From positions 434,001 through 498,000 of IMG/VR virus record IMGVR_UViG_3300024239_000011: DNA of 64,000 nucleotides. One strand, given 5' to 3'. Each line of letters begins with the position of its first letter. The stretch's first letter is position 1. The translations under genes and the position numbers were made by a program. This document shows positions 16,701 through 60,916 of the stretch, in pieces. Below the pieces are notes generated by a model. That model was not told the origin of the DNA. It ran no database searches and worked only from the letters and a program-made list of their open reading frames with translations.

Positions 16701-18242
16701 TTAATCGTGACCCGCTTCGTAGCGATGCACCATTTGGTCGTCGGCGTCCCGGCTGTCCAAAACGACTTTGTATCCCCACAGGCGGCTTATATGCTTGAGA
16801 ACTTCCTGGGTGTTCTGTTCATCCAGTGGAATGTCGTCACACATGCGATGATGCAGAACTAGAGTACGGCTACCGCGTAGATTGGCAGCCATCACCTGAA
16901 TGTCGGGTTCCAGGCGCGACACGTTGTATTGGCGCGAGAAAGCCCGACGAATATCTCGAAAACCACTGCCATTGTGGATATGGGTAACATCATATTCATC
17001 TGCATCCTCATCGTCATGCACAAGAAACAACTTCCGCTTCCGCATGACGGTGGGTGAAAGATATTGGAGGATGAAACTTTCGTCGCGATAGTTGGTAACC
17101 GCATCCAGCAGTACCGCCCGCCAATCCAGATTGCCCGCAAAATCAAACCATTCACGGTCTTCATCGGTGGGATTTTCACAGATGCGCTTGATGTCCTGCA
17201 TCATGTCGAAGCCAATGGCATACGGGTTGAAGCCACCATAGCGCGGATCATCGAAATCGGGCTGGAAGACCACGTTGGTGTGGCTCTGGGTGAATTCCAT
17301 CCAGGCACCATCGGTGATCATGCCCTTGTCCCAGAGACGGTTCATGATGTAGTGGTGGACAAAGGTAGCGAAACCTTCATTCATCACCTTGGTCTGTTTT
17401 TGCGGGTAGAAATACTGGCTGATCTTGCGGACAATGCGGATGATCTCGCGCTGCCATGCTTTCAGGGTCGGGCTGTTCTTCTCAAGGAAGTACAGGATGT
17501 TCTCTTCCGGCAGCCGGGCACGCCCACGCAGAGTGTCAGATTCGTCTTTCTCGTCCGCCGTGTCAGCAACCGGACCTTGCGGCACGGTGCGCCACAGATC
17601 GTTGAACGACCGCTCTTCGTATTCCTGCTGCGCCTTGACCCGCTCGCGCTCGCGTTCTGCGCTCAGCTTCTCGGGGCGATGATAGCGATCAACGCCGTGT
17701 GACATCAGGGCGTGGGCAGAATCCAGCAGGGCTTCCACTTCATCAAACCCATACCGTTGTTCGCAGTGGTTGATGTAGTCCTTCGCAAATGCAAGGTAGT
17801 CGAGGATGCCATCAGCATCCGTCCACTGCTTGAACAGATAGTTGTTGGCAAAGAAGTGGTTGTGCCCGAACGCAGCGTGTGCCATCACCAGAGCTTGCAT
17901 GGTCATCGTGTTCTCTTCCATGCAGTAGCTAATGCATGGATTCGAGTTGATCACGATTTCATAAGCAAGACCTTGACGCCCCTTGCGGTAATTCGTCTCG
18001 TCTCTGGCAAAATGCTTGCCAAATGACCAGTGCTGGTACATCAGGGGCATGCCGATGGACGAATAAGCGTCCAACATTTGCTCGGCGCTGATGATCTCGA
18101 TCTGATTTCGATACGGTTTCAGCCCGAGATCATTGATGGCGATGTCTTCGATGGCGTCGTAAGTGCGTTTAAGGGTGTCAAAATCCCATTCAGCACCTTC
18201 AAACAGCGGCTTGACCAACTTACCACGAGGCTTCCGCGCCAT
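16701..18242 (-). CDS. spoVR: SpoVR family protein (YcgB)
   Basis: HWSFGK, GLAYEIVINSNPC, AHAAFGHNHFF, YFYPQKQTKVMNEG. Confidence 0.95.
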   Translation of the reverse strand: MARKPRGKLVKPLFEGAEWDFDTLKRTYDAIEDIAINDLGLKPYRNQIEIISAEQMLDAYSSIGMPLMYQHWSFGKHFARDETNYRKGRQGLAYEIVINSNPCISYCMEENTMTMQALVMAHAAFGHNHFFANNYLFKQWTDADGILDYLAFAKDYINHCEQRYGFDEVEALLDSAHALMSHGVDRYHRPEKLSAERERERVKAQQEYEERSFNDLWRTVPQGPVADTADEKDESDTLRGRARLPEENILYFLEKNSPTLKAWQREIIRIVRKISQYFYPQKQTKVMNEGFATFVHHYIMNRLWDKGMITDGAWMEFTQSHTNVVFQPDFDDPRYGGFNPYAIGFDMMQDIKRICENPTDEDREWFDFAGNLDWRAVLLDAVTNYRDESFILQYLSPTVMRKRKLFLVHDDEDADEYDVTHIHNGSGFRDIRRAFSRQYNVSRLEPDIQVMAANLRGSRTLVLHHRMCDDIPLDEQNTQEVLKHISRLWGYKVVLDSRDADDQMVHRYEAGHD

Positions 18243-18321
18243 TATTTCGCTCCATTACTAACGACCATAACTTGGTCGCAAATTACAGTCAAACGTGTGG
18301 TTTTGTCCACCCATACCGCTA

Positions 18322-19609
18322 TTATGCTTCCTTTTTAAATAGTTCCCGGAAGACAGGGAAAATTTGGTTTGCTGCTCGAATCTTGCGCATTTGGAATTTA
18401 TCCCACCGATCATTAATCGGCTTGTAGGTACGCCATAGATCGGTTTCGCTATTTCCCCAATTTTTGTATTCGTGACCCACTTCAATGAAGGCGTAATACT
18501 GGACGATTGGTAGAATTTTTTCGTTGAGCAAATTTTGGCAGTACGTATTGTCCGACGACACGTTATCGCCATCCGACGCTTGCGCGGCGTAGATGTTCCA
18601 CTGATCCAGGGGATACCGCTCGCGGATGACTTTATCCATCAATTCCAGCGAGGTGGATACCACGGTGCCGCCAGTTTCGGTGTCGTAGAAGAAGGTTTCT
18701 TCATCGACCTCCTTTGCTTCATGGGTGTGACGAATAAACACCACGTCGATACGCTGATACTGACGACGTAGGAAAAGATAGAGCAACATGAAGAACCGCT
18801 TCGCGAGGTCTTTCATGTGTTCGGTCATCGATCCCGATACGTCCATCAGACAGAACATCACCGCTTGTGTTGCCGGGAGGGGATGCTTGACATGAAGGTT
18901 GTACCGCACGTCCACCGGGTCCACAAATGGTACCGATTTCATACGACGCCGAATCGTTTGAACTTCCAAATGGAGTTCAGTCAACCGGTCGGTTTCTTCG
19001 GTAGTGCGCGGAGTTTTGGTTTCCAAGCGGAAGATTTCCGCCTCCAATTCCTTCAATTCTGCCGTCTTCGGACGGCGCAATGCAATCCGGCGACCAACCG
19101 CATTACGCATGGTCTGACGAATGTTCAAATTGCTTGGATTGCCTACGGTTGTGTAGCCACCACGTCGATACTCATATGAGATTGACTGCCGCAATTGCTT
19201 CTTGACCATATCGGGCAGTTCCAAATCCTCAAAGAAAATATCGAGGAATTCGCTGCTGTTAAGCACAAACTGAAAGTCATCCTGCCCTTCGCCGTCCGGG
19301 GAACCTTCGTTCCCTTGACCACCGCCCCGGCGGGATTTGGGGATAGTGTCGCCGGGGACATATTCCTTGTTGCCAGGAACGACGCGATCATGCCGACCAC
19401 CTTCGCCATGGACAATATGCGGCTCGCGGATGCCCTTGCTGGGGATGACAATTTTCCCCTTGGTATTGGCGATATCCTTGATATCGGTTTCGCCAATATG
19501 TTTCTTCACGGCTTCCTTGATTTGCTCTTTCGCCCGGCGAATGAAACGCTGCCGATTAACAAGGCTTTTGCCCTGCGGGTTTTTGCGGCGGTCGATAATG
19601 TCCAGCATA
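18322..19609 (-). CDS. yeaH: YeaH/YhbH (DUF444) vWA-like protein
   Basis: IIDRRKNPQGKSLVNRQRF, PGNKEY, AVMFCLMDVSGSM, ETGGTVVS, QASDGDN. Confidence 0.95.
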
Positions 19610-19891
19610 TCAAATGATCCCAATCCCAATTGTGATGGTTTTGATACCGTCGTTCTTAGCGCGGCACTGAAATTCTGCGACCAGACCACCGCGTTCTTCT
19701 CGAACAAATACCGTGTAATTGGAAATTTTGCGTTTCCACTTCAACATTTCACCCACTCGTGAAAGTCCTGCCTCAACCCCCGCCACCATTGCTAGTGATG
19801 GGGGATCGAAGCTAAAAGGCTCGACTTCTGCCCGAATTGCTTCGGTTAGGTCGAGTTCACCGATGGTGGTGGCACCGGAGAACGAGATCAC
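19610..19891 (-). CDS. Hypothetical protein
   Basis: 93 aa ORF filling the gap between the endonuclease and yeaH. Confidence 0.5.
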   Translation of the reverse strand: MISFSGATTIGELDLTEAIRAEVEPFSFDPPSLAMVAGVEAGLSRVGEMLKWKRKISNYTVFVREERGGLVAEFQCRAKNDGIKTITIGIGII

Positions 19892-19919
19892 GAGAAAAGT
19901 TCCAAACTAATATCGATCA

Positions 19920-20624
19920 TCATACACCCTTTGAAATAGTGCGCCCAGGATACCAACCTTCGCCAACCAAGTCTAACTCAGAAATATGGATTCGTTTGTT
20001 TTCGGTTCCGTTGGTTATCCATTTCCACTCACGTTTTTTCTCGGCACCTTTCTTATGACCTAACAACATTGCTTCAGTAGGTTCATTATGTCTGGCTTTT
20101 ACGGACTCCGCGATTTTCTCTCGCCATTCATCCGTCTTACCCTTGCCCTTCCGAACCTCTGACATTTTCTCCCGTACTTCATCAGGGAGGTTTTTACCGC
20201 GCCAACCTGAACCTATTCGGTGCCGCACATCATCGGCAAGGTCGTAGGTTTTACCTTTTCGCGGCGATGGGCGTCCTTTTTGTACCTTGCTTATTTTCTC
20301 TCGCGTTTCCGGTGATACGTCAGTGAGAACCGCTTGCTGAAGTATGTTATACTCTGGTTGTAATGTATCCAAGTAATGCTGTTCACGCTCAACTAATATT
20401 TTTTGATCACAGGCGGTTAATTCGGTTATTTCAAAGACAAATGCATCTTCACCATATTTGTTCCAAGCATTTTGAAGATGTTTATTGTGATGTTTACCTT
20501 TACGTAGTTCGCAGCGGTGTTCGGAAAATCGTCGTGTTATATCTTTACTTGAGCCGACATACCGTTTTCCGTTCTTTGTATTCCTAATCTGGTAAACACC
20601 TGATCGTTTTATATGCTGTGCCAT
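19920..20624 (-). mobile_element. Free-standing GIY-YIG homing endonuclease with NUMOD3 repeats
   Basis: SGVYQIRN...YVGSS, REQHYLD, ETREKIS/EVREKMS repeats; AT-rich insert within the prkA operon. Confidence 0.9.
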
Positions 20625-20749
20625 CTAGTCCCCGATGATAAACAGGTTATTACACCTATTTATCATCGGAGTTAAATGGAGTACGCGAATGCCCTTTTAT
20701 GCACACGCATATACCATTCTACTAAATGGTGAGATTGGTCGGAGTACGA

Positions 20750-22693
20750 TCAACCCGCCCGACGAACGCGCATGTACCATTCCACGAGACGGCGCACTTG
20801 GCGTTCGGTGTAGCCCTGCTCCACCATCCGGTTAAGGAAGTCGTGGTGTTTCTTCTCGGTGTCCTTGTCCTTCTTGGCACCGAACGAGATCACCGGCAGC
20901 AAATCTTCGGTGGCGCTGAACATGCGCTTTTCGATGACTTCCTTCATTTTCTCGTAGGAAGTCCACTTGGGCATTTTCCCGGCGTTGTTCGCTTTGTTGC
21001 AAAGCACCCACTGGACGATTTCCTGACGGAAATCCTTGGGATTGGCGATGCCGCACGACTTCTCGATTTTCGACAGTTCAGTGTCGAGAACCGTCATGCT
21101 GAACATCTGACCGGTATCCGGGTCTTTATAATCCACGCCCTGACACCACGCATCCGCATAAGACACGTAACGCTCGAAGATGTTCTGACCGTATTCTGAA
21201 TAGCTGTCCAGATAAGCTTTCTGAAGGGTCTTTTCCAGATGCTCGGCATACTTGGGCGCCAGGAACTCCTTGATGAATTCAATGAGTTGCTGTTCTTTTT
21301 CCTCCGGGAACTGCTCGCGTTTGATTTCCTGTTCCAGCACATACATCAGATGCACGGGATCAGCCGCAACTTCGTTCGGGTCGAAGTTGAAGACTTTGGA
21401 CAGGATTTTGAACGCGAAGCGGGTGGAGATGCCCTCCATACCCTCGTTGACGCCCGCGACATCACGATACTCTTGCATCGTCTTTGCCTTGGGGTCAACG
21501 TCCTTCAGACCTTCGCCGTTGTAGACGCGCATTTTTGAGAACAAGTTCGAGTTCTCGTGCTCCTTCAGACGCGACAGCACGCTGAATTGAGCCAGGATAT
21601 CGAGGGTTTGCGGAGCGCACGGCGATTTTCCGAGGCTACCACCATCCAGCATTTTGCGATAGATGTCCACTTCCTCGTCATAGCGCAGGCAATAGGGTAC
21701 CTTGATGACGCAGATACGGTCCAAGAACGCTTCGTTGTTCTTGTTATTGCGGAAAGTTTGCCACTCGGATTCGTTCGAGTGGGCGAGAATGATACCGTTG
21801 AACGGGATCGCGCCCAGTGACTCGGTACCGATGTAGTTGCCTTCCTGCGTGGCGGTCAGCAGCGGATGCAGCACCTTGATGGGCGCCTTGAACATTTCCA
21901 CGAATTCCATCACGCCCTGGTTTGCACGGCACAGAGCGCCGCTGAACGAGTAGCAGTCCGGGTCATTCTGGCTGTAGTGTTCCAGCTTGCGGATGTCCAC
22001 CTTGCCAACTAGGGCGGAAATGTCCTGATTGTTCTCGTCGCCCGGTTCGGTTTTGCAGATCGCAACCTGCTTAAGACGGCTCGGGATCATCTTGACGACT
22101 TTGAATTTGGAATAGTCGCCACCGACTTCCCCCAGCCGCTTGACTGCCCATGGGGAGGTCAGACCGGTGATGTAGCGGGTCGGAATGTTGTATTCCGCTT
22201 CAATTTCGTCTGCCAACGCCACCGGGAATAGGTTCAGGGGCGATTCGAAAACCGGTGACAGTTCGGAACGTTTACCGTCATCGAATTTCAGCACGTAGAT
22301 CGGGTGCTTTTCCATCAGCGCCTTCAGGCGCTCAGCCAGCGAGGACTTACCACCGCCGACCGGACCAAGCAGGTAGAGAACCTGCTTGCGTTCTTCAAGA
22401 CCCTGCGCGGCGTGGCGGAAATAACCAACGATGCGTTCCACGGTTTCTTCCATACCGAAGAAATCCGCAAAAGCCGGATACCGCTTAATCGTGCGATTCA
22501 TGAAGATACGCGACAAACGCGGATCGGTGCTGGTATCAATAACTTCCGGTTCACCAATTGCCTTAACCATGCGTTCTGACGCAGAGGCATACATCAACGG
22601 GTCGGAGGCGCACTGTTGAAGGTATTCCTCCAAAGACATTTCCTCTTCGTGATCCCGTTGGAATGTCGCCTGGAACTTACTCAAAATCGACAT
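20750..22693 (-). CDS. prkA: PrkA/YeaG family AAA+ serine kinase
   Basis: LLGPVGGGKSSLAE, EPGDENNQDIS, FVEMFKAPIKVLHPLLTATQE, AHSNESEW. Confidence 0.96.
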   Translation of the reverse strand: MSILSKFQATFQRDHEEEMSLEEYLQQCASDPLMYASASERMVKAIGEPEVIDTSTDPRLSRIFMNRTIKRYPAFADFFGMEETVERIVGYFRHAAQGLEERKQVLYLLGPVGGGKSSLAERLKALMEKHPIYVLKFDDGKRSELSPVFESPLNLFPVALADEIEAEYNIPTRYITGLTSPWAVKRLGEVGGDYSKFKVVKMIPSRLKQVAICKTEPGDENNQDISALVGKVDIRKLEHYSQNDPDCYSFSGALCRANQGVMEFVEMFKAPIKVLHPLLTATQEGNYIGTESLGAIPFNGIILAHSNESEWQTFRNNKNNEAFLDRICVIKVPYCLRYDEEVDIYRKMLDGGSLGKSPCAPQTLDILAQFSVLSRLKEHENSNLFSKMRVYNGEGLKDVDPKAKTMQEYRDVAGVNEGMEGISTRFAFKILSKVFNFDPNEVAADPVHLMYVLEQEIKREQFPEEKEQQLIEFIKEFLAPKYAEHLEKTLQKAYLDSYSEYGQNIFERYVSYADAWCQGVDYKDPDTGQMFSMTVLDTELSKIEKSCGIANPKDFRQEIVQWVLCNKANNAGKMPKWTSYEKMKEVIEKRMFSATEDLLPVISFGAKKDKDTEKKHHDFLNRMVEQGYTERQVRRLVEWYMRVRRAG

Positions 22694-22931
22694 TTCTCGA
22701 TCCTTGTCCGATTCCACCACCAAGGAACATCAATTCGATGCCCCAATACGATATAGCCACAAGAGCAATAGCCTGTCACTAAGTTTTGGGCCAAAGCGCG
22801 ATTTGATACCGCGCTCTCTGTGGCGATCCCGGTGAAAATATGCATACCCCAAGTCCATGGTGTTTGACTACGAATAAATTGAAGATTCGTTTATGGTTGT
22901 GATAGGACGTATCAAACGACAGGAGACAGTC

Positions 22932-30173: not shown

Positions 30174-30641
30174 TCAATTTTTCGACTTACGTTCTGGACC
30201 AAAGTATTTCTCAGATTTAATGAAGTTTGTTGGTTGAAAAAGGCAGGCATTAACCCGTTCTTCTAATTGAGAAATGGTTGTCCCAGCGGTGATAATCGCG
30301 TTTGCCCCGTACTGTGCTGCTTGGTTTACTCGGTTTTTGTCTGGGTCATCAAATAAGATGATTACCGGGACATATGGATTGGAGCCATATGCTCCATGCC
30401 GTACATCGTCCAAAAGGGACAGTCCCGATATACCGGGGAGGTCAGCCGATAAAATTAGAAGATCATGAGGCTGTCGCATCGCATTCAAGGTTTCGACCCC
30501 ATCATTCACCTGAATTACCCAGAACCCCAAATTGAACAGTGACATTCCAAGCTGGGTACCTTTACTGGTGTCAGCAATAGCCACAATAATGACGATTTGT
30601 GATCGAGTTTTGGTATTGGGGTTGATTTTAATTAATTGCAT
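30174..30641 (-). CDS. Single-domain pseudo-receiver (response regulator-like)
   Basis: DLLILSADLPGISGLSLL..VR...NPYVPVIIL...GAN...YFGPERK. Confidence 0.75.
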   Translation of the reverse strand: MQLIKINPNTKTRSQIVIIVAIADTSKGTQLGMSLFNLGFWVIQVNDGVETLNAMRQPHDLLILSADLPGISGLSLLDDVRHGAYGSNPYVPVIILFDDPDKNRVNQAAQYGANAIITAGTTISQLEERVNACLFQPTNFIKSEKYFGPERKSKN

Positions 30642-31479: not shown

Positions 31480-31620
31480 TTTGTACCTCTTTGATTCGTA
31501 AGATAATGTTCACGTTATGTTCCGTCGATTTATTTTTCATTGCTATCGAGAAAAATTCACACAGCGGTAACATAGTATGGTGATACAAGTCGGTAAATAA
31601 CCTCAACTAGGAGGCAAATA

Positions 31621-32379
31621 ATGAAGGCTTATCGTACTATTTGGATTAGTGATACGCATTTAGGGACTAAAGGTTGTAAAGCATCATTTTTAGTCGATTT
31701 CTTAAAACACAATACTTGCGATACACTTTATCTTGTTGGCGACATCATCGATGGATGGCGCATGAAAAGTGGCATGTTTTGGCCGCAAGAACATACAAAT
31801 GTAGTCCGTCGAATATTGACCAAGGCAAAACGCGGTACGAGCGTTGTTTATATTCCAGGGAACCATGACGATTTTCTTCGGGCGTGGTTGGAGTATCATC
31901 CTCAATTCGGGAACATAGTAATACAGAACGAAGCGATTCATACCTTGAGTGATGGACGTAAGGTGTTGGTAACTCATGGCGATCTTTTTGATGGCATCAC
32001 GTGTTATGCGCCGTGGCTTTCAAAACTAGGTGATCACGGATATGGTTTTTTGCTAACATTCAATCATTTGTTCAATAAGGTTAGGAGTAAATTAGGGTAC
32101 AAATATTGGTCCTTGAGTTCTTTTGTAAAAGGAAAGGTCAAATCCGCTGTGAACTTTATTACCAGTTTCGAGCAATCACTTGCACGTGAGGCAAAAACAC
32201 GGGGACTGGATGGGGTGATTTGTGGACATATTCACCATGCGGAGATACGCGAGATTGACGGAATACTCTATGCCAATGATGGTGATTGGGTAGAAAGTTG
32301 TACCGCACTAGTCGAACATCATGACGGGCGTCTTGAGATCGTCAAATGGGTTGAAATTTCACATGAGCAAGAAATATGA
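31621..32379 (+). CDS. PlcP/LpxH2-like metallophosphoesterase (putative phospholipase C)
   Basis: ISDTHLG, LVGDIIDGW, PGNHD, HGDLFD, ICGHIH, NDGDWVESCTALVE. Confidence 0.85.
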   Translation: MKAYRTIWISDTHLGTKGCKASFLVDFLKHNTCDTLYLVGDIIDGWRMKSGMFWPQEHTNVVRRILTKAKRGTSVVYIPGNHDDFLRAWLEYHPQFGNIVIQNEAIHTLSDGRKVLVTHGDLFDGITCYAPWLSKLGDHGYGFLLTFNHLFNKVRSKLGYKYWSLSSFVKGKVKSAVNFITSFEQSLAREAKTRGLDGVICGHIHHAEIREIDGILYANDGDWVESCTALVEHHDGRLEIVKWVEISHEQEI

Positions 32380-33383
32380 AGATAGTAATTTGCACAGATG
32401 CCTCCCGTCCACAGATCAACGGGGTCGTAACTACTCTGGAACATACAAAAACAGAGCTTGAAAACCTTGGTCATGAAGTCATTATGATCGAGCCATCGTT
32501 ATTCGCAACGATACCTTGTCCAAGTTATTCGGAAATTCGCTTAGCGTATAATGCTTTTTGGCATCTACCCCGCCTTATAAATGAAATTGACCCGGATTCC
32601 ATACATATAGCAACGGAAGGTCCGATTGGCGCTGCGGCGCGGTTATACTGTGCGTTAAAACAGATACCATATTCAACATCTTACCATACAAAATTTCCAG
32701 AATATGTTCGCAAACGTTGGCCGATACCGTTATGGGTTACGTATGGTTACCTTCGCTTGATACACGGCAGCGCCAAGGCAATATTGGTTACGACTGGATC
32801 AATGGCTACCGAATTACATGAGCGTGGATTTAAAAACCTAGTCGTATGGTCTAGAGGCGTGGATTCGGATTTGTTTTCACCATCGCGTGCGACTGATCTC
32901 GGGTTGCCACGCCCAATTCATCTGTCGGTAGGGCGTATATCAATAGAGAAAGGTTTGGATGATTTTCTCGCCCTACAAATACCCGGCACCAAATTGGTAG
33001 TTGGGGATGGTCCACAATTGAAGGATATGAAGAGCCGATATCCTGATGCGATTTTTGTAGGAGCAAAGCGTGGAACCGATCTGGCGACATATTACGCCTC
33101 TGCTGACGTTTTTGTATTTCCGAGTAAGACCGACACATTTGGGGTGGTAATGCTTGAAGCAATGGCGTCCGGTACCCCCGTCGCGGCTTATCCGGTTACC
33201 GGACCAAAAGATGTGATCACCAATGGGAGCGGTAAGCTGGATACCGATCTCAAAAGGGCAATTGAACATTGTTATACGATTGACCGGCGTCAATGCGCTG
33301 AGTTGGGGCGCACATTCACCTGGGAGTCATGCGCCCGCACTTTCCTCAATTCATTGGCGATCATCCCCAAATTTACGCGCTAA
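32376..33383 (+). CDS. GT4 glycosyltransferase, Agt-like
   Basis: TDA..PQINGVV.TL, HIATEGPIG, SYHTKFPEY, FPSKTDTFGVVMLEAMASGTPVAAYPV. Confidence 0.88.
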   Translation: MKIVICTDASRPQINGVVTTLEHTKTELENLGHEVIMIEPSLFATIPCPSYSEIRLAYNAFWHLPRLINEIDPDSIHIATEGPIGAAARLYCALKQIPYSTSYHTKFPEYVRKRWPIPLWVTYGYLRLIHGSAKAILVTTGSMATELHERGFKNLVVWSRGVDSDLFSPSRATDLGLPRPIHLSVGRISIEKGLDDFLALQIPGTKLVVGDGPQLKDMKSRYPDAIFVGAKRGTDLATYYASADVFVFPSKTDTFGVVMLEAMASGTPVAAYPVTGPKDVITNGSGKLDTDLKRAIEHCYTIDRRQCAELGRTFTWESCARTFLNSLAIIPKFTR

Positions 33384-33411
33384 ATAGAAAAACCGATGTT
33401 ATTTGGAGTAG

Positions 33412-33909
33412 GTGATGAGGTTGATTGAGGTGCTGGAAGAGAGCGCAACCGATAGCCTTCAGCGCAGAATTGCAAGTCTCGAAGCCATTATGAACGATCC
33501 TGCTGCAACAGCCGGGGAACGGGAGAATGCTCGTCTCTTGAAGGACAATTTGGAGCGGAAACGCGCATCAAGCATACCTACGGTGGAAACCGTTCTTATT
33601 CAAGTCCTTCAGAACATGAACGCTTATTGCGAACCGCCTTATTACGGGGCGCAACTTTGGGGTTTGAACTGGATACGTTTCATCGAATTTCTAACATCTG
33701 CGTTGCGTCCGTACTGCACCATCGTTGGGCGTAGTCCAACAAGTGGCGACTATTCCATCAGTATGGACTACTCCCGGCGTATAATCACAATTAGTTATAA
33801 CAGCAGTTATATGAAAGTCGCCAGCCCCCAACATTTCATTGGGAAGTTGCTATTTGCAGACCTAAAGCCAATCGTTGAACGGATGGTCGCGACGAGTAGA
33901 GCCGCTTAA
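33412..33909 (+). CDS. Hypothetical protein, putative head-internal
   Basis: MRLIEVLEE N terminus; DPAATAGERENA; TAAATA at 33381-33386. Confidence 0.65.
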   Translation: MMRLIEVLEESATDSLQRRIASLEAIMNDPAATAGERENARLLKDNLERKRASSIPTVETVLIQVLQNMNAYCEPPYYGAQLWGLNWIRFIEFLTSALRPYCTIVGRSPTSGDYSISMDYSRRIITISYNSSYMKVASPQHFIGKLLFADLKPIVERMVATSRAA

Positions 33910-35249: not shown

Positions 35250-35429
35250 TGGAAATCCTCGGTTTTCATGCCTTCATCCATAGGCACCGAGGTATTTATC
35301 ATCGCTCTTCGAAAAAATTTTGAAAATAGTGTTGACAACCTGAAGCTGGGTAAGTAAATTGATCTTCAGACGGGGAGCCGAACCCAGTCGAAGACAACAG
35401 ATCGGCACATGGACTACGGAGAACAAAAT

Positions 35430-35906
35430 ATGTCTGCCCAAAACACCGAACGTAATGCCTTCATCACCCAGGGCGTCAACGCCTTCCTCAACGGCGCTGG
35501 TGCCGGTGTCACCCGCGAGAAGATCGCTGAAGTCACCGCCGCGCTGGGCGATGCCTTCGACAGCATGAACAAGCCCGCCGAAGTCGTCGCCGAGAAGCCG
35601 GTGCCCGCCATCGCGGTCAAGAAGTCGATCAACCCCGATTTCATCGTCTGCCTGGAAGACGGCAAGAAGCTGAAGATGCTGAAGCGCCATCTGCGCACCA
35701 CCTACAACCTGTCCCCCGAGGAATATCGGGAAAAGTGGGGTCTGCCCGCCGACTACCCGATGGTCGCCCCGAACTACGCCGCTCAGCGTTCGTCGCTGGC
35801 GAAGGAACACGGTCTGGGTCGCAAGCCCGCCGCTGCCGCCCCGGCTGCCCAGCCCGCCGACGCCAAGCCGCGCCATCGCCGCAAGAGTGCCGACAAGGCG
35901 GCGTAA
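35430..35906 (+). CDS. mucR: MucR/Ros family transcriptional regulator
   Basis: PAIAVKKSI.PDFIVCLEDGKKLKMLKRHL...YREKWGLPADYPMVAPNY...RS.LAK..GLG. Confidence 0.95.
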   Translation: MSAQNTERNAFITQGVNAFLNGAGAGVTREKIAEVTAALGDAFDSMNKPAEVVAEKPVPAIAVKKSINPDFIVCLEDGKKLKMLKRHLRTTYNLSPEEYREKWGLPADYPMVAPNYAAQRSSLAKEHGLGRKPAAAAPAAQPADAKPRHRRKSADKAA

Positions 35907-36394: not shown

Positions 36395-37135
36395 TTATTC
36401 TTCGCCGTAGAGTTCGAGGACTTCTTTCACCACTGGGTGACGCTTCACATCTTCGCGGCTGAATTCCACCACCGTGATGTGGCTGGATTTCTTGATGCGA
36501 CCCAGGAAATCCTTCAGACCGTTGGCTTCGTAACCACGGTCGTGCTGCTGAAGGTCGCCAGTAATGAAAATGCGGCTACCATCACCGATACGAGTTAGGA
36601 TCATCTTGGTCTGTGACGGAGTGGAGTTCTGCATTTCGTCAGCGATGACGTAGGCGTTCTTGAAGGTACGCCCGCGCATATAAGCGAGCGGGGCGATTTC
36701 AAGGATTCCTTCTTGGAGCATGTTGGCGATCTCTTTAACCGAGTAATGCTCCTTGAACACGTCCAGAATGGGCAGAACCCATGGTTCCATTTTCTGGTTG
36801 ATGTCACCGGGCAGGAAGCCATGTTGCTCGTCGGTTGAAACCGCCGGGCGAGTAATCACGATTCTTTCAATTTTTCCCTCTTGGAGGTCTTGAATTGCCT
36901 TCATGGTTGCCAAGAGCGTCTTACCACAGCCCGCAGGACCAACCGCTGCGACGATGTACATTTCATCATCGTCCAGTGCGAGGACATATTCTTCTTGGTT
37001 GATGGAACGGGGAACTATTTCGATGCGTTTCTTGCGCTGGTGCGGACGGTAATTATCGAGATCAATAAGCGTGGCAGTGGGCTGGTAGTCTGTAGCGAGT
37101 TTGCGATTAACTCGACGCTGCTGCTTTTTAGCCAA
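36395..37135 (-). CDS. phoH: PhoH family ATPase
   Basis: GPAGCGKT, ITRPAV, GFLPGD, LAYMRGRTF, ADEMQN, TGDLQQHD. Probable TTG start at 37135 after GGAGG. Confidence 0.95.
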   Translation of the reverse strand: MAKKQQRRVNRKLATDYQPTATLIDLDNYRPHQRKKRIEIVPRSINQEEYVLALDDDEMYIVAAVGPAGCGKTLLATMKAIQDLQEGKIERIVITRPAVSTDEQHGFLPGDINQKMEPWVLPILDVFKEHYSVKEIANMLQEGILEIAPLAYMRGRTFKNAYVIADEMQNSTPSQTKMILTRIGDGSRIFITGDLQQHDRGYEANGLKDFLGRIKKSSHITVVEFSREDVKRHPVVKEVLELYGEE

Positions 37136-37267
37136 TGGAAACCTCCGTAATAGGGCACCCGACACCGCGTGGGTGCAAAAGTATTTACGGAGGCAGAAAT
37201 GATTAAGAGTGGTGTTTTATCCATACTGCGTGCGCAGCTAAATACTCTACTGTTGACGTGTGATCTG

Positions 37268-59119: not shown

Positions 59120-60916
59120 TTAACAGAAGTTGTGCCGGATAAAGCCGTAAAGGTATTTACCGTCGCAATGAAACTCGATAACGTCGGTTGCGTTCGGTAC
59201 AGTAGTCAGACGTGGTTTCCCGCCGGGGAACTTAATCATGTCTGCAAATTTGATGTCGTGACCACCAACATCGTCTTGATGGATGAAGAGGACATAGGTG
59301 TGACCCGCCACGCACCCATCCACCGACAGTTCGATAGGTTTGTCCAAGAAAAGGGTCATGGTCCGCGAGCGATTCATCAACCAAACCGTTTTTGCATCAC
59401 ACGGAAGTTCACCATGTGAGACGGTCATTACTTCGTTCCAGCCGGTTACCTCGCAGACTTCAAAGCTGGTCGTCTCTTCGTTGTAGCGAATCAGCCCGGT
59501 TTCATGCTCGCCTCGGTCATAGGTTCGGCCACATGGAACTTTCAAACCGCGCCGCCCACCAACACGTAGATTGGACGCCAGAGAAATGACCGGATTACCA
59601 AGGGCACCGTCTCCATTTACTATGTCGATTTGATCTGGTTGACCAACCAGGGTACGACCAACCAGATTATCACCCACCTTGATCATCACCCCACCGAGGA
59701 CACCCGTAACCTTATCAACTACGGCACCGTCTTGCTTCAGGTCGCGCCCATCAATCACTCCACCATCTGGGAATACGATACTGCCACGGATGTACAGATC
59801 GCCTTTGATTGCATCACCCGTTTTGGTAATGAAACGGTCGTCCGCCTCTGACTTGGTGTAGTGGTTCGGAAGCTGGGTCTGAATGATTGCGTTCGACAAA
59901 CCCTTGACCACGCCAGAACCGCGCACGTCGCCCTGGAAGGTTAGTTTGAAATCGGAGGCACCGATCTCTGGGTTCCCATCGAAACCGTCTCCATGGCGTA
60001 CCGTAATACCACTGACACCCTTAATTTCACGCGGGGCAGTCTCGGTACCGGGACGACGTTGAACCACGAAGCCTGCGGCGTTGCCCAAGGTGGAACGCAA
60101 ATATCGAGTATCATTGTAATCGCGGTCGCCAATATGAGTACCATAGATGGGTTCCTTGACGCCCTTCAGGTAATTACCATTGAGATCAAGGGTTCCCATC
60201 ATCTTCCCACCGGTCGTGGAAAGCACTTCATTGGTGTCAAGACGGAGGTTCAGAACTATGTCCTCAAGGTTTTTAACCTTCACCGAGCCTTTGACATCGC
60301 CCCGCACCACCAGATTGAAGCCCTTAATACCCACGGTCGGCGGACCCTGTACACCGTCATGATTTAGGACGCGCAAGCCATCAATGGCTTCAAGATGACG
60401 CCCAGTGAATACGCCATCTGCTTGCCGCACCAGAATACCACTTTTGGTATTTATGCGGTCTAGCAGCAGTCCATCCTTGGTTAAATCACGACCAGCAACC
60501 GTGAAACCGTCATCAACATGAATGTTGGCGTTCTTCATGACCAGATCACCTGTCATGGTATCGCCGGTTTGGTTGACGTAGGTGTTTGAGCCATCTTCGA
60601 CTGAAACAATACGTCCTTTTATATCCACTGTGATTTTAGCTGCATCGTATGTACCGGCAACAACACCGGTTTCTGTCAGGCACAACTTGATTTTGAGGGG
60701 GTCGCTGCCTTCAGCAATGTATGAGGAAACGCCAACAACATCACCCTCTACCTTGATGAACTTGTTCTGGATGCGACTAATTTCATCTGCCGCCTGTCCT
60801 AGATTATCTGCGATAGAGGCAAAGTTGTCCCGAAAACCCTGTGTTGAATTTGCCTGCTTGGCCTTCGGAAAGTCTTTGTCAATGCCGGTAATGTCTATTT
60901 TTGACCCAAATGCCAT
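59120..60916 (-). CDS. Tail fibre protein
   Basis: FP...Q.N..QGFRDNF, GV.AGTY...TVD.KGR, GD.M.GDL and NGDG..GNP repeats, L.I.QD..GG. Confidence 0.8.
   Translation of the reverse strand: MAFGSKIDITGIDKDFPKAKQANSTQGFRDNFASIADNLGQAADEISRIQNKFIKVEGDVVGVSSYIAEGSDPLKIKLCLTETGVVAGTYDAAKITVDIKGRIVSVEDGSNTYVNQTGDTMTGDLVMKNANIHVDDGFTVAGRDLTKDGLLLDRINTKSGILVRQADGVFTGRHLEAIDGLRVLNHDGVQGPPTVGIKGFNLVVRGDVKGSVKVKNLEDIVLNLRLDTNEVLSTTGGKMMGTLDLNGNYLKGVKEPIYGTHIGDRDYNDTRYLRSTLGNAAGFVVQRRPGTETAPREIKGVSGITVRHGDGFDGNPEIGASDFKLTFQGDVRGSGVVKGLSNAIIQTQLPNHYTKSEADDRFITKTGDAIKGDLYIRGSIVFPDGGVIDGRDLKQDGAVVDKVTGVLGGVMIKVGDNLVGRTLVGQPDQIDIVNGDGALGNPVISLASNLRVGGRRGLKVPCGRTYDRGEHETGLIRYNEETTSFEVCEVTGWNEVMTVSHGELPCDAKTVWLMNRSRTMTLFLDKPIELSVDGCVAGHTYVLFIHQDDVGGHDIKFADMIKFPGGKPRLTTVPNATDVIEFHCDGKYLYGFIRHNFC

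What the first reader, a model, noticed from the sequence alone, without database searches (positions are those of the whole stretch)
31621..33383. Phage-borne PlcP plus Agt-like membrane lipid remodelling cassette
Seen: overlapping (ATGA) metallophosphoesterase and GT4 genes with TAAATA upstream, and phoH 3 kb away. Known: in Alphaproteobacteria, PlcP releases diacylglycerol from phospholipids and the adjacent Agt makes glucosyl or glucuronosyl DAG under P starvation. Inference: the phage could mine host membrane phosphate for DNA synthesis while substituting glycolipids, an unusual auxiliary system. LpxH-like lipid A chemistry is the alternative.
Basis: partly seen in the sequence, partly recalled or inferred. 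Interest (0 to 1): 0.7.

Follow-up and report, generated by a model that had tools for sequence, protein, structure and literature searches.

The report
Phage PlcP–Agt membrane lipid remodelling cassette
A giant phage carries the two-enzyme bacterial pathway that strips phosphate head groups from membrane phospholipids and rebuilds them as sugar lipids, and the same cassette is widespread but mislabelled in hundreds of other phage genomes.

Summary
Two translationally coupled genes overlap in ATGA: ORF1 (31621-32379, metallophosphoesterase) and ORF2 (32376-33383, GT4). They follow a TAAATA motif, and phoH lies 3 kb away.

The PlcP/Agt reading is supported and the LpxH alternative is rejected. 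ORF1 scores 46 bits on the LpxH model (cut-off 190). It keeps His in GNHD where all LpxH have Arg. It is 57% identical to the Burkholderia cepacia-complex counterpart of the characterised PlcP. Five bacterial genomes with an ORF1-like gene each hold a separate LpxH (four above the model's cut-off, one just under).

ORF2 carries the Agt/GTcp signature (His104, Asp253, FPSKTDTFG, Arg160, Trp316). In five bacterial genomes its best hit is always the GT4 gene beside plcP.

The cassette is not rare. At least 582 IMG/VR contigs encode a relative. In 61 of 63 assessable loci plcP is directly followed by a glycosyltransferase: 28 Agt-type and 33 GT2/GT21-type. Both genes group with other phage copies in trees, including the one in Pelagibacter phage Mosig.

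TAAATA is this phage's own promoter-like motif (126 of 623 genes, 12.8-fold enriched). No Pho box was found.

The enzyme chemistry is well supported by sequence evidence. Phosphate scavenging as the purpose is inferred. I found no paper describing phage PlcP.

The parts
31594..31599 (+). TAAATA promoter-like motif of the phage, 21 nt upstream of the ORF1 start
   Evidence: Sequence. Genome-wide it precedes 126 of 623 ORFs against about 9.8 expected, with consensus [A/C]TAAATA[C] peaking 20-35 nt before starts.
31610..31614 (+). GGAGG ribosome-binding site of ORF1
   Evidence: Read directly from the sequence.
31621..32379 (+). plcP-like gene: Mn-type metallophosphoesterase, predicted phospholipase C releasing diacylglycerol (252 aa)
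   Evidence: Pfam Metallophos. LpxH models score 46 and 41 bits against cut-offs 190 and 134. All metal-binding motifs are present, with His82 in GNHD. It is 57% identical to the Burkholderia latens PlcP counterpart. It sits in the PlcP clade apart from LpxH. The AF2 model has an LpxH-like fold with a helical insertion.
32376..32379 (+). ATGA start/stop overlap coupling ORF1 and ORF2
   Evidence: A near-identical short overlap, read from alignment coordinates, appears in at least eight other viral loci.
32376..33383 (+). agt-like gene: GT4 diacylglycerol glucosyl/glucuronosyl-transferase (335 aa)
   Evidence: GT4 Pfam domains. GTcp/Agt signature residues are present (against PMC8231724). It is 49% identical over its full length to the Burkholderia Agt counterpart. 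Its best hit in 5 bacterial genomes is always the GT4 next to plcP, at 319-363 bits, while ordinary GT4 paralogues score 37 bits or less. AF2 pLDDT is 94. The nearest Swiss-Prot folds are glycolipid GT4 enzymes: MgtA, SQD2 and MGlc-DAG synthases, TM 0.80-0.88.
33412..33909 (+). downstream ORF3 (165 aa, no family) with its own TAAATA at 33381-33386; probably not part of the cassette
   Evidence: No Pfam, NCBIfam or PHROG hit. Not homologous to the gene in the same position of the related phage L006. Absent from 160 related loci.
36395..37165 (-). phoH, a neighbouring phosphate-starvation-type phage gene preceded by the same TAAATA motif
   Evidence: Pfam PhoH E 3e-68. TAAATA lies 16 nt upstream.

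Best explanation
ORF1 and ORF2 are a phage-encoded copy of the bacterial PlcP-Agt lipid-remodelling pathway. ORF1 is a PlcP-type, dinuclear-metal (Mn) phospholipase C. It cleaves the phospho-head group from host phosphatidylethanolamine, phosphatidylglycerol or phosphatidylcholine and leaves diacylglycerol in the membrane. ORF2 is an Agt/GTcp-type GT4 transferase that moves glucose or glucuronic acid from a UDP-sugar onto that diacylglycerol, giving phosphorus-free glycolipids that keep the bilayer intact. The two genes are translationally coupled (ATGA) and are preceded by the phage's own TAAATA promoter-like motif, so the pathway would run during infection whatever the host's Pho status. What the evidence shows: family membership, catalytic residues, synteny, and long co-inheritance of both genes within phages. 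What is inferred: the enzyme activities themselves, and the purpose. The proposed purpose is to free membrane phosphorus for replication of a very large genome while postponing membrane failure. Rough arithmetic from my own knowledge: a bacterial cell holds on the order of 2e7 phospholipids, and a 0.54-0.87 Mb dsDNA genome needs 1.1-1.7e6 P atoms. The membrane pool is therefore worth roughly 10-20 genomes.
For: Not LpxH:
- LpxH models score 46 and 41 bits against cut-offs 190 and 134.
- The whole family scores 37-60 bits on these models.
- ORF1 has His82 in GNHD, whereas LpxH has Arg 'in all species' (PMC5016852). The five true LpxH fetched here all have GNRD.
- Five genomes with an ORF1-like gene each hold a separate LpxH at 182-261 bits, four of them over the cut-off.

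Is PlcP:
- ORF1 is 54-62% identical to the homologues in 80 proteobacterial genomes, including Burkholderia latens (57%).
- According to PMC13691135, cepacia-complex species carry a PlcP more than 84% identical to the characterised BCAL2364, in a plcP-agt-dagK operon.
- Characterised PlcPs are only 46-47% identical to one another (PMC8528852).
- The careful tree places ORF1 inside the PlcP family, with LpxH split off at 100/100.

Is Agt:
- ORF2 has G16, G82, G85, H104, S159-R160, GRISIEKG, FPSKTDTFG with D253, E261 and W316. These match the residues shown essential in GTcp (PMC8231724).
- The orthology test is, and 49% identity to the Burkholderia Agt counterpart is.
- The nearest folds are glycolipid GT4 enzymes.

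Functional unit:
- An ORF2-like GT4 directly follows plcP in about 58 of 80 bacterial loci, often with a divergent DagK.
- A glycosyltransferase directly follows plcP in 61 of 63 assessable viral loci.
- The PlcP and Agt trees both put the window with phage L006 inside a phage clade (98/91 for PlcP; 100/98 for Agt).

Phosphorus link:
- phoH lies 3 kb away under the same promoter motif.
- pstS is adjacent in phage Mosig.
- A bona fide pstS lies 3 kb upstream in L126.
- phoH lies within a few kb in 8 viral loci.
Against: - No enzyme activity was measured.
- The link to a characterised PlcP goes through an uncharacterised Burkholderia counterpart. I could not fetch PA3219, SMc00171 or the MED193 protein themselves.
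- No canonical Pho box lies upstream, unlike the bacterial operons.
- This phage has no dagK, pstS or fatty-acid desaturase.
- PlcP releases phospho-head groups, not free phosphate, so host phosphatases would still be needed.
- One metatranscriptome holds pieces of neighbouring genes but none of the cassette.
- The host is unknown.
- The helical insertion of the ORF1 model has only moderate confidence (pLDDT about 50-80 over residues 120-190).
Confidence: 0.75

Rival explanations
1. The enzymes act as proposed (phospholipid to diacylglycerol to glycolipid), but the selected benefit is a changed membrane rather than phosphorus supply. Possibilities include blocking superinfection or altering receptor and porin display, tuning lysis timing, or changing susceptibility to cationic antimicrobials or grazers.
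For: The cassette is preceded by a phage promoter-like motif with no Pho box, so it would run whatever the phosphorus status. This phage has no pstS. Eleven viral loci carry a DesA-family fatty-acid desaturase next to the cassette, which points to membrane tailoring in general. In bacteria, PlcP-dependent remodelling changes membrane protein content, polymyxin resistance and grazing susceptibility (PMC8528852, PMC9804370, PMC9457565).
Against: plcP is repeatedly linked to pstS and phoH in independent phages. Genome sizes of 160 kb to at least 543 kb mean a high phosphorus demand. The two purposes do not exclude each other.
Confidence: 0.2
2. ORF1 is an LpxH-type UDP-2,3-diacylglucosamine diphosphatase and the pair acts on lipid A or LPS.
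For: The closest solved and Swiss-Prot structures are LpxH (TM about 0.55-0.65, about 20% identity). Automatic names of homologues, including those in phages Mosig and S-SRM01, say LpxH.
Against: Scores are far below both LpxH cut-offs. The LpxH-specific Arg is His here (PMC5016852). Genomes with an ORF1-like gene also carry a separate LpxH. A long, fully supported branch separates the two families. The partner gene corresponds to a diacylglycerol glycosyltransferase, not an LPS enzyme.
Confidence: 0.03
3. The two genes are passenger DNA picked up recently from a host, or a metagenome chimera, with no role in infection.
For: Bacterial homologues are very common and about 60% identical.
Against: Identical gene order appears in four independent assemblies. 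A related phage, L006, keeps both genes at 65% and 60% identity. Both genes fall in phage clades. All catalytic residues are intact. The phage's own promoter-like motif and a strong ribosome-binding site precede the cassette. GC content matches the surroundings.
Confidence: 0.02

Closest known systems
Bacterial PlcP-Agt(-DagK) lipid-remodelling operon (S. meliloti SMc00171; Phaeobacter MED193_17359/17354; P. aeruginosa PA3219/PA3218; B. cenocepacia BCAL2364-2366; Pelagibacter HTCC7211 PlcP/GTcp)
   Same: Same two enzyme families in the same order and orientation, often overlapping. All catalytic and substrate-binding residues described for GTcp are present, as are the metallophosphoesterase motifs. 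ORF1 is 57% and ORF2 48-49% identical to the Burkholderia cepacia-complex counterparts.
   Different: It is carried by a phage. No Pho box is present; a phage TAAATA promoter-like motif takes its place. There is no dagK. PlcP is shorter, lacking the 25-50 aa C-terminal tail of the bacterial proteins. Both genes belong to phage-specific clades.
LpxH (UDP-2,3-diacylglucosamine diphosphatase, lipid A pathway)
   Same: Same metallophosphoesterase fold with a helical insertion domain for a lipid substrate. It is the nearest solved structure.
   Different: About 20% identity. His rather than the LpxH-specific Arg. Below the family cut-offs. A separate paralogue in the same genomes. PMC5016852 already argued that the P. 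aeruginosa paralogue 'LpxH2' has a different substrate.
Known phage phosphate-stress auxiliary genes (pstS, phoH, phoA in cyanophages and pelagiphages) and cyanophage lipid desaturases
   Same: Phage genes that copy host phosphorus-starvation or membrane-lipid functions. In several phages the cassette sits beside pstS, phoH or desA.
   Different: Those genes import phosphate or alter acyl chains. This cassette would take phosphorus out of the host's own membrane and replace the lipid class. I found no paper describing it.
Unrecognised copies in cultured phages: Pelagibacter phage Mosig (Mosig_00120) and Synechococcus phage S-SRM01
   Same: The Mosig protein is 52% identical to ORF1, lies next to pstS, and falls in the same phage PlcP clade.
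   Different: Both are annotated as UDP-2,3-diacylglucosamine hydrolase and neither has an adjacent glycosyltransferase. The genome papers do not mention them. The S-SRM01 copy is only 37% identical and very divergent.

Membership tests
PlcP (metallophosphoesterase phospholipase C of lipid remodelling) | Complete calcineurin-like metal-binding motifs (DxH, GDxxD, GNH[D/E], HGD, GHxH) | tested here: met
   D11/H13, D41, N81/H82, H119, H203/H205 are present and invariant across 55-57 homologues.
PlcP (metallophosphoesterase phospholipase C of lipid remodelling) | Groups with PlcP counterparts of characterised lineages, apart from LpxH | tested here: met
   In the careful tree LpxH splits off at 100/100. 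ORF1 lies inside the family that holds the Burkholderia cepacia-complex, Azospirillum and Caulobacter homologues. It is 57% identical to B. latens. The characterised proteins themselves could not be fetched, so the link is indirect, via PMC13691135.
PlcP (metallophosphoesterase phospholipase C of lipid remodelling) | Helical, aromatic-rich insertion domain between the HGD and GHxH motifs | tested here: met
   The AF2 model shows helices at 120-193. By my count on the sequence, 13 of about 74 residues there are F, Y or W. Compare the description of 'PaLpxH2' in PMC5016852.
PlcP (metallophosphoesterase phospholipase C of lipid remodelling) | Glycolipid glycosyltransferase gene immediately downstream | tested here: met
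   ATGA overlap with ORF2. The same arrangement appears in about 58 of 80 bacterial loci and 61 of 63 viral loci.
PlcP (metallophosphoesterase phospholipase C of lipid remodelling) | Pho box and induction by phosphate starvation | tested here: not met
   No CTGTCAT-N4-CTGTCA-type site lies upstream of the cassette, and only one loose TGTCA repeat exists in 543 kb. A phage TAAATA motif is there instead. This is a regulatory trait of the host operons, not of the enzyme.
PlcP (metallophosphoesterase phospholipase C of lipid remodelling) | Mn-dependent phospholipase C activity on PE, PG or PC yielding diacylglycerol | not testable with these tools
   Needs an enzyme assay or lipidomics.
LpxH | Score above the curated equivalog cut-offs (TIGR01854 190 bits; NF003743 134 bits) | tested here: not met
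   46.2 and 41.4 bits. True LpxH from the same bacterial genomes score 182-261 bits, four of five above the cut-off.
LpxH | Arg replacing the His of the GNH(D/E) motif (Arg80 of PaLpxH), invariant in LpxH | tested here: not met
   ORF1 has GNHD with His82. All five LpxH fetched have GNRD. The rule is stated in PMC5016852.
Agt / GTcp clade of GT4 (diacylglycerol glucosyl/glucuronosyl-transferase) | GT4 GT-B fold of about 335 aa | tested here: met
   Pfam Glyco_transf_4 plus Glycos_transf_1. AF2 pLDDT 94 with two Rossmann-like halves. GT4 structures match at TM up to 0.79 and Swiss-Prot glycolipid GT4 enzymes at 0.80-0.88.
Agt / GTcp clade of GT4 (diacylglycerol glucosyl/glucuronosyl-transferase) | Catalytic dyad His104-Asp256, with Asp in place of the usual GT4 Glu | tested here: met
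   His104 and Asp253, the latter within FPSKTDTFG. Both positions are invariant or nearly invariant in 54 homologues. The feature is defined in PMC8231724.
Agt / GTcp clade of GT4 (diacylglycerol glucosyl/glucuronosyl-transferase) | UDP-sugar motifs GRVAxEKN and FPSxTDTFG plus the Gly-rich motif | tested here: met
   GRISIEKG at 186-193, a variant that keeps Arg187 and Lys192; FPSKTDTFG at 248-256; G16, G82, G85 and E261.
Agt / GTcp clade of GT4 (diacylglycerol glucosyl/glucuronosyl-transferase) | Diacylglycerol-binding residues (His104, Thr162, Arg163, Trp320 of GTcp) | tested here: met
   His104, Ser159 (a conservative Thr-to-Ser change), Arg160 and Trp316. Equivalence was judged from motif context, not from a direct alignment with GTcp.
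Agt / GTcp clade of GT4 (diacylglycerol glucosyl/glucuronosyl-transferase) | Corresponds specifically to the plcP-linked GT4, not to other GT4 paralogues | tested here: met
   In 5 bacterial genomes the top hit (319-363 bits, 48-51% identity, full length) is the gene next to plcP. Ordinary GT4 paralogues score 37 bits or less. One genome has a second Agt-like copy at 301 bits.
Agt / GTcp clade of GT4 (diacylglycerol glucosyl/glucuronosyl-transferase) | Sugar donor specificity (UDP-Glc, UDP-GlcA or UDP-Gal) and the alpha-linked product | not testable with these tools
   Characterised members differ: Agt1 uses Glc only, Agt2 GlcA only, and GTcp all three (PMC8528852, PMC8231724).

The most novel reading that the evidence does not exclude
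Dismantling host membrane phospholipids and rebuilding them as glycolipids is a widespread, old and so far unrecognised phage strategy. A phage-specific plcP lineage, present in at least 582 IMG/VR contigs and in the cultured Pelagibacter phage Mosig, is almost always coupled to one of two interchangeable glycolipid transferases (Agt-type GT4 or a small GT2/GT21-type enzyme). It often sits beside pstS, phoH or desA. If correct, infected cells in phosphorus-poor waters change lipid class under viral control. This would affect phosphorus budgets and the use of glycolipid-to-phospholipid ratios as markers of bacterial phosphorus stress.
Probability: 0.5. Interest if true: 0.75.

Novelty: new variant of a known kind. 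Interest (0 to 1): 0.62.

Why it matters
Phages are known to carry phosphate-uptake genes (pstS, phoA, phoH). A phage-borne route that extracts phosphorus from the host's own membrane while keeping the bilayer intact has not, as far as I could find, been described.

The genes are already in public phage genomes, including a cultured SAR11 phage, but under the wrong name (LpxH, lipid A synthesis). As a result they are filed under LPS metabolism in catalogues of phage metabolic genes.

Correcting this gives a directly testable hypothesis. Expression in E. coli followed by lipidomics is a simple experiment, and Mosig with Pelagibacter is a cultured system.

It also bears on how lipid-based indicators of phosphorus stress are read in nature, because part of the signal could come from infected cells.

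Tried and rejected
**Pho box.** Regex scans of the whole 543-kb genome found no canonical site upstream of the cassette. A sigma-70 scan gave no more sites than shuffled sequence.

**Upstream direct repeat.** An 11-bp-spaced repeat (TGTTCACGTTA / TGTTCCGTCGA, 31507-31528) is only partly echoed in phage L006 and does not recur in the genome. It remains unexplained.

**ORF3 as a third member.** It has no family hit, no homologue at the same place in L006, and none in 160 related loci. Rejected.

**Transcription evidence.** One wastewater metatranscriptome holds exact pieces of neighbouring genes but none of plcP or agt. As the tool warns, this does not show transcription either way.

**Independent acquisition.** The quick 173-row tree put the window outside the main viral clade. 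A constrained search found a tree 46.7 log-likelihood units better with them together (p-AU 0.84). The careful 67-row tree supports one phage clade. I therefore withdrew the 'separate capture' reading.

**Named characterised proteins.** The named control genomes yield no sequences, and the genome scan returns only the 80 nearest relatives. The link therefore runs through Burkholderia cepacia-complex counterparts.

- The paper on PlcP's manganese dependence (PMC6052262) is not held.
I rebuilt the alignment without them.
- Two contig look-ups failed through an off-by-one on minus-strand coordinates, and one comparison used a wrong reading frame.
- tblastn and family searches found no dagK, pstS, fatty-acid desaturase or terminase in the 543-kb record.
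Full report
**1. What is in the sequence**

The window is bases 434,001-498,000 of a 543,035-bp IMG/VR virus record. It is a very large phage. It has tail-fibre, baseplate and Dda-helicase matches, 66 tRNA genes and 48.7% GC.

At the reported coordinates there are two intact + strand ORFs. ORF1 is 31621-32379 (252 aa) and ORF2 is 32376-33383 (335 aa). They overlap in ATGA. ORF1 is a calcineurin-like metallophosphoesterase and ORF2 a GT4 glycosyltransferase. phoH lies at 36395-37165 on the opposite strand.

The same gene order occurs in four independent assemblies, and sequencing runs from subsurface, soil, groundwater, freshwater and wastewater samples also hold the region.

**2. The TAAATA motif is a real feature**

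TAAATA sits at 31594-31599, 21 nt before the ORF1 start, followed by a GGAGG ribosome-binding site.
- Across the 543-kb genome it is the most enriched hexamer in the 60 nt before ORFs.
- It precedes 126 of 623 ORFs, against about 9.8 expected.
- Its consensus is [A/C]TAAATA[C], and it peaks 20-35 nt before start codons.
- It also precedes phoH, ORF3 and the tail-fibre-like genes at 57-61 kb.

I read it as the phage's own promoter element. From my own knowledge it resembles the T4 late promoter TATAAATA. No canonical Pho box was found.

**3. ORF1 is not LpxH**

- It scores 46 and 41 bits on the two NCBI LpxH equivalog models, whose cut-offs are 190 and 134.
- Its bacterial and phage relatives all score 37-60 bits.
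- Okada et al. (PMC5016852) state that only in LpxH is the His of the GNH(D/E) motif replaced by Arg, in all species. ORF1 has GNHD (His82). The five true LpxH I fetched all have GNRD.
- Five bacterial genomes that contain an ORF1-like gene each contain a separate LpxH scoring 182-261 bits (four of them over the cut-off). Where their ORF1-like gene was reported, in two of the five, it scored about 34 bits.
- LpxH is nevertheless the nearest solved fold (TM about 0.55-0.65, about 20% identity). This fits PlcP being a paralogue with the same catalytic core and a helical lipid-binding insertion.

**4. ORF1 is a PlcP**

A scan of one genome per prokaryotic species found at least 594 relatives. The 80 nearest are Alpha-, Beta- and Gammaproteobacteria at 54-62% identity. 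They include Burkholderia latens and another cepacia-complex strain at 57%.

PMC13691135 shows experimentally that BCAL2364-2366 of B. cenocepacia is a plcP-agt-dagK lipid-remodelling operon. It also reports that cepacia-complex species carry PlcP counterparts more than 84% identical in the same operon. Characterised PlcPs from Pseudomonas, Phaeobacter and Sinorhizobium are only 46-47% identical to one another (PMC8528852). ORF1 therefore lies well inside the family's known range.

All metal-binding residues are present and invariant in 55 homologues.

**5. ORF2 is an Agt**

Wei et al. (PMC8231724) define the Agt/GTcp clade by these features:
- a length of about 334 aa;
- a His104-Asp256 dyad, with Asp in place of the usual GT4 Glu;
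- the motifs GRVAxEKN and FPSxTDTFG;
- a Gly-rich motif;
- the diacylglycerol-binding residues His104, Thr162, Arg163 and Trp320.

ORF2 (335 aa) has G16, G82, G85, H104, S159-R160, GRISIEKG, FPSKTDTFG with D253, E261 and W316.

In five bacterial genomes its best match is always the GT4 gene adjacent to plcP (319-363 bits, 48-51% identity, full length). Ordinary GT4 paralogues score 37 bits or less, and one genome has a second Agt-like copy. It is 49% identical to the Burkholderia counterpart of the characterised BCAL2365.

The AF2 model is confident (pLDDT 94). Its nearest reviewed proteins are glycolipid GT4 enzymes: MgtA, plant SQD2, and the monoglucosyl-diacylglycerol synthases of Streptococcus and Acholeplasma, with TM 0.80-0.88.

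**6. The pair is a unit, in bacteria and in phages**

An ORF2-like GT4 follows plcP on the same strand in about 58 of 80 bacterial loci, often with a divergent diacylglycerol kinase gene.

Five of the large records (160-360 kb) each have a large terminase, and one has terminal repeats.

Among 67 non-identical viral loci:

| Gene directly after plcP | Loci |
|---|---|
| Agt-type GT4 | 28 |
| 253-aa GT2/GT21-type glycosyltransferase | 33 |
| contig ends at the gene | 4 |
| no glycosyltransferase | 2 |

Neighbouring genes include a bona fide pstS, phoH, and a DesA-family desaturase in 11 loci. SegE endonucleases and ribonucleotide reductase also occur, which suggests T4-like phages.

A second large phage contig (L006) has both genes at 65% and 60% identity. 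A TnsA-like/DUF7487 endonuclease gene is inserted between them.

**7. Phylogeny**

A quick tree of 173 rows placed the window's gene outside the main viral clade. A constrained search then found a better tree with them together (46.7 log-likelihood units, p-AU 0.84).

The careful tree of 67 rows gives one phage clade. The window plus L006 (98/86) is sister to Mosig plus 24 IMG/VR sequences, and the whole clade has support 98/91. This clade is sister to a Nevskia/Thiomicrorhabdus-type gammaproteobacterial group (100/99) and is nested among Alphaproteobacteria. LpxH is the outgroup at 100/100.

The Agt tree mirrors this. The window plus L006 has support 99/97. All 20 viral sequences, the window and one bacterial sequence lie on one side of a 100/98 branch. 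The cassette is therefore an old phage module, not a recent capture.

**8. How it most likely works**

Shown by the evidence: family membership, intact catalytic residues, translational coupling, a phage promoter-like motif, and conservation as a pair.

Inferred:
- ORF1 removes phospho-head groups from host PE, PG or PC.
- ORF2 glycosylates the resulting diacylglycerol.
- The membrane stays intact while phosphorus becomes available to the phage.

The phosphorus rationale rests on linkage to phoH and pstS in several phages, and on rough arithmetic from my own knowledge. A cell holds about 2e7 phospholipids, and one genome of this size needs 1.1-1.7e6 P atoms.

A membrane-property role (superinfection, lysis timing, antimicrobial or grazer resistance) is a serious rival and may coexist with phosphorus supply.

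**9. Novelty**

Ten full-text searches found papers on bacterial PlcP-Agt but none on phage-encoded PlcP. The genome papers for Mosig and S-SRM01 do not mention the gene, and GenBank names it LpxH.

The library does not cover subscription journals, so prior description cannot be excluded. I rate this a new variant of a known kind: a known bacterial pathway, found here as a phage-lineage cassette with phage regulation.

Noticed in passing
whole record; L181 12737-20825 and L185 1-9700: The 543,035-bp IMG/VR record, which CheckV rates '100% complete', is not the whole genome. ENA contig ERZ27245855 k141_178484 (869,618 bp) continues past both ends with phage-type genes. These include the large terminase (split by DUF7487 endonuclease genes), a GyrA/ParC-like gene with an intein, TnpB and a Peptidase_M32. 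If the contig is not chimeric, this is a phage genome of at least 870 kb, larger than any I know of.
   Followed up: partly
genome-wide; in the window e.g. 31594-31599, 33381-33386, and upstream of 36395-37165 and 59120-60916: [A/C]TAAATA[C] precedes 126 of 623 ORFs (12.8-fold enrichment), mostly 20-35 nt before the start codon. It is likely the phage's own promoter class and is shared by plcP, phoH and tail-fibre-like genes.
   Followed up: partly
viral loci L097, L129, L156 and 30 others (e.g. L156:8686-9444): In half of the related phages, plcP is followed not by Agt but by a small (about 253 aa) GT2/GT21-type glycosyltransferase. This is a second, uncharacterised partner that may make other glycolipids. 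A DesA-family desaturase lies next to it in 11 loci.
   Followed up: partly
L001:5001-5738 (Pelagibacter phage Mosig) and L010:3998-4702 (Synechococcus phage S-SRM01): Cultured phages carry plcP-like genes annotated as UDP-2,3-diacylglucosamine hydrolase. In Mosig the gene sits back to back with pstS. The annotation is probably wrong.
   Followed up: partly
window 16701-22723 (- strand): Three neighbouring genes resemble the bacterial PrkA/YeaG kinase (657 aa; its best phage-database match is annotated YeaG), an adjacent protein that I take from my own knowledge to be YeaH-like (513 aa), and a SpoVR-like sporulation protein (461 aa). The kinase also matches other huge phages (LR756502 and others) and Ralstonia phage RsoM2USA.
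   Followed up: no
window 35409-35906 (+) and 30174-30641 (-): A Ros/MucR-family zinc-finger regulator (E 2e-39) and a stand-alone response-regulator receiver protein flank the cassette. From my own knowledge Ros/MucR is typical of Alphaproteobacteria, so it may hint at the host.
   Followed up: no
window 31507-31528: An 11-bp-spaced direct repeat (TGTTCACGTTA / TGTTCCGTCGA) lies in the plcP upstream region. It is partly echoed upstream of plcP in phage L006 and does not recur elsewhere in the genome. It could be an operator, or chance.
   Followed up: partly
L006:10713-11687 (- strand): In the related phage a DUF7487/TnsA-like endonuclease gene is inserted between plcP and agt. The same family interrupts the terminase region of the 870-kb contig, and a DUF723/DUF7487 gene lies near the end of the 543-kb record. 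This looks like a mobile endonuclease family spreading in these phages.
   Followed up: no
genome C1:77,583-160,000: ARAGORN reports 66 tRNA genes. The part of the list I saw, about 55 of them, lies in an 80-kb stretch on one strand and includes one call with a four-base anticodon.
   Followed up: no
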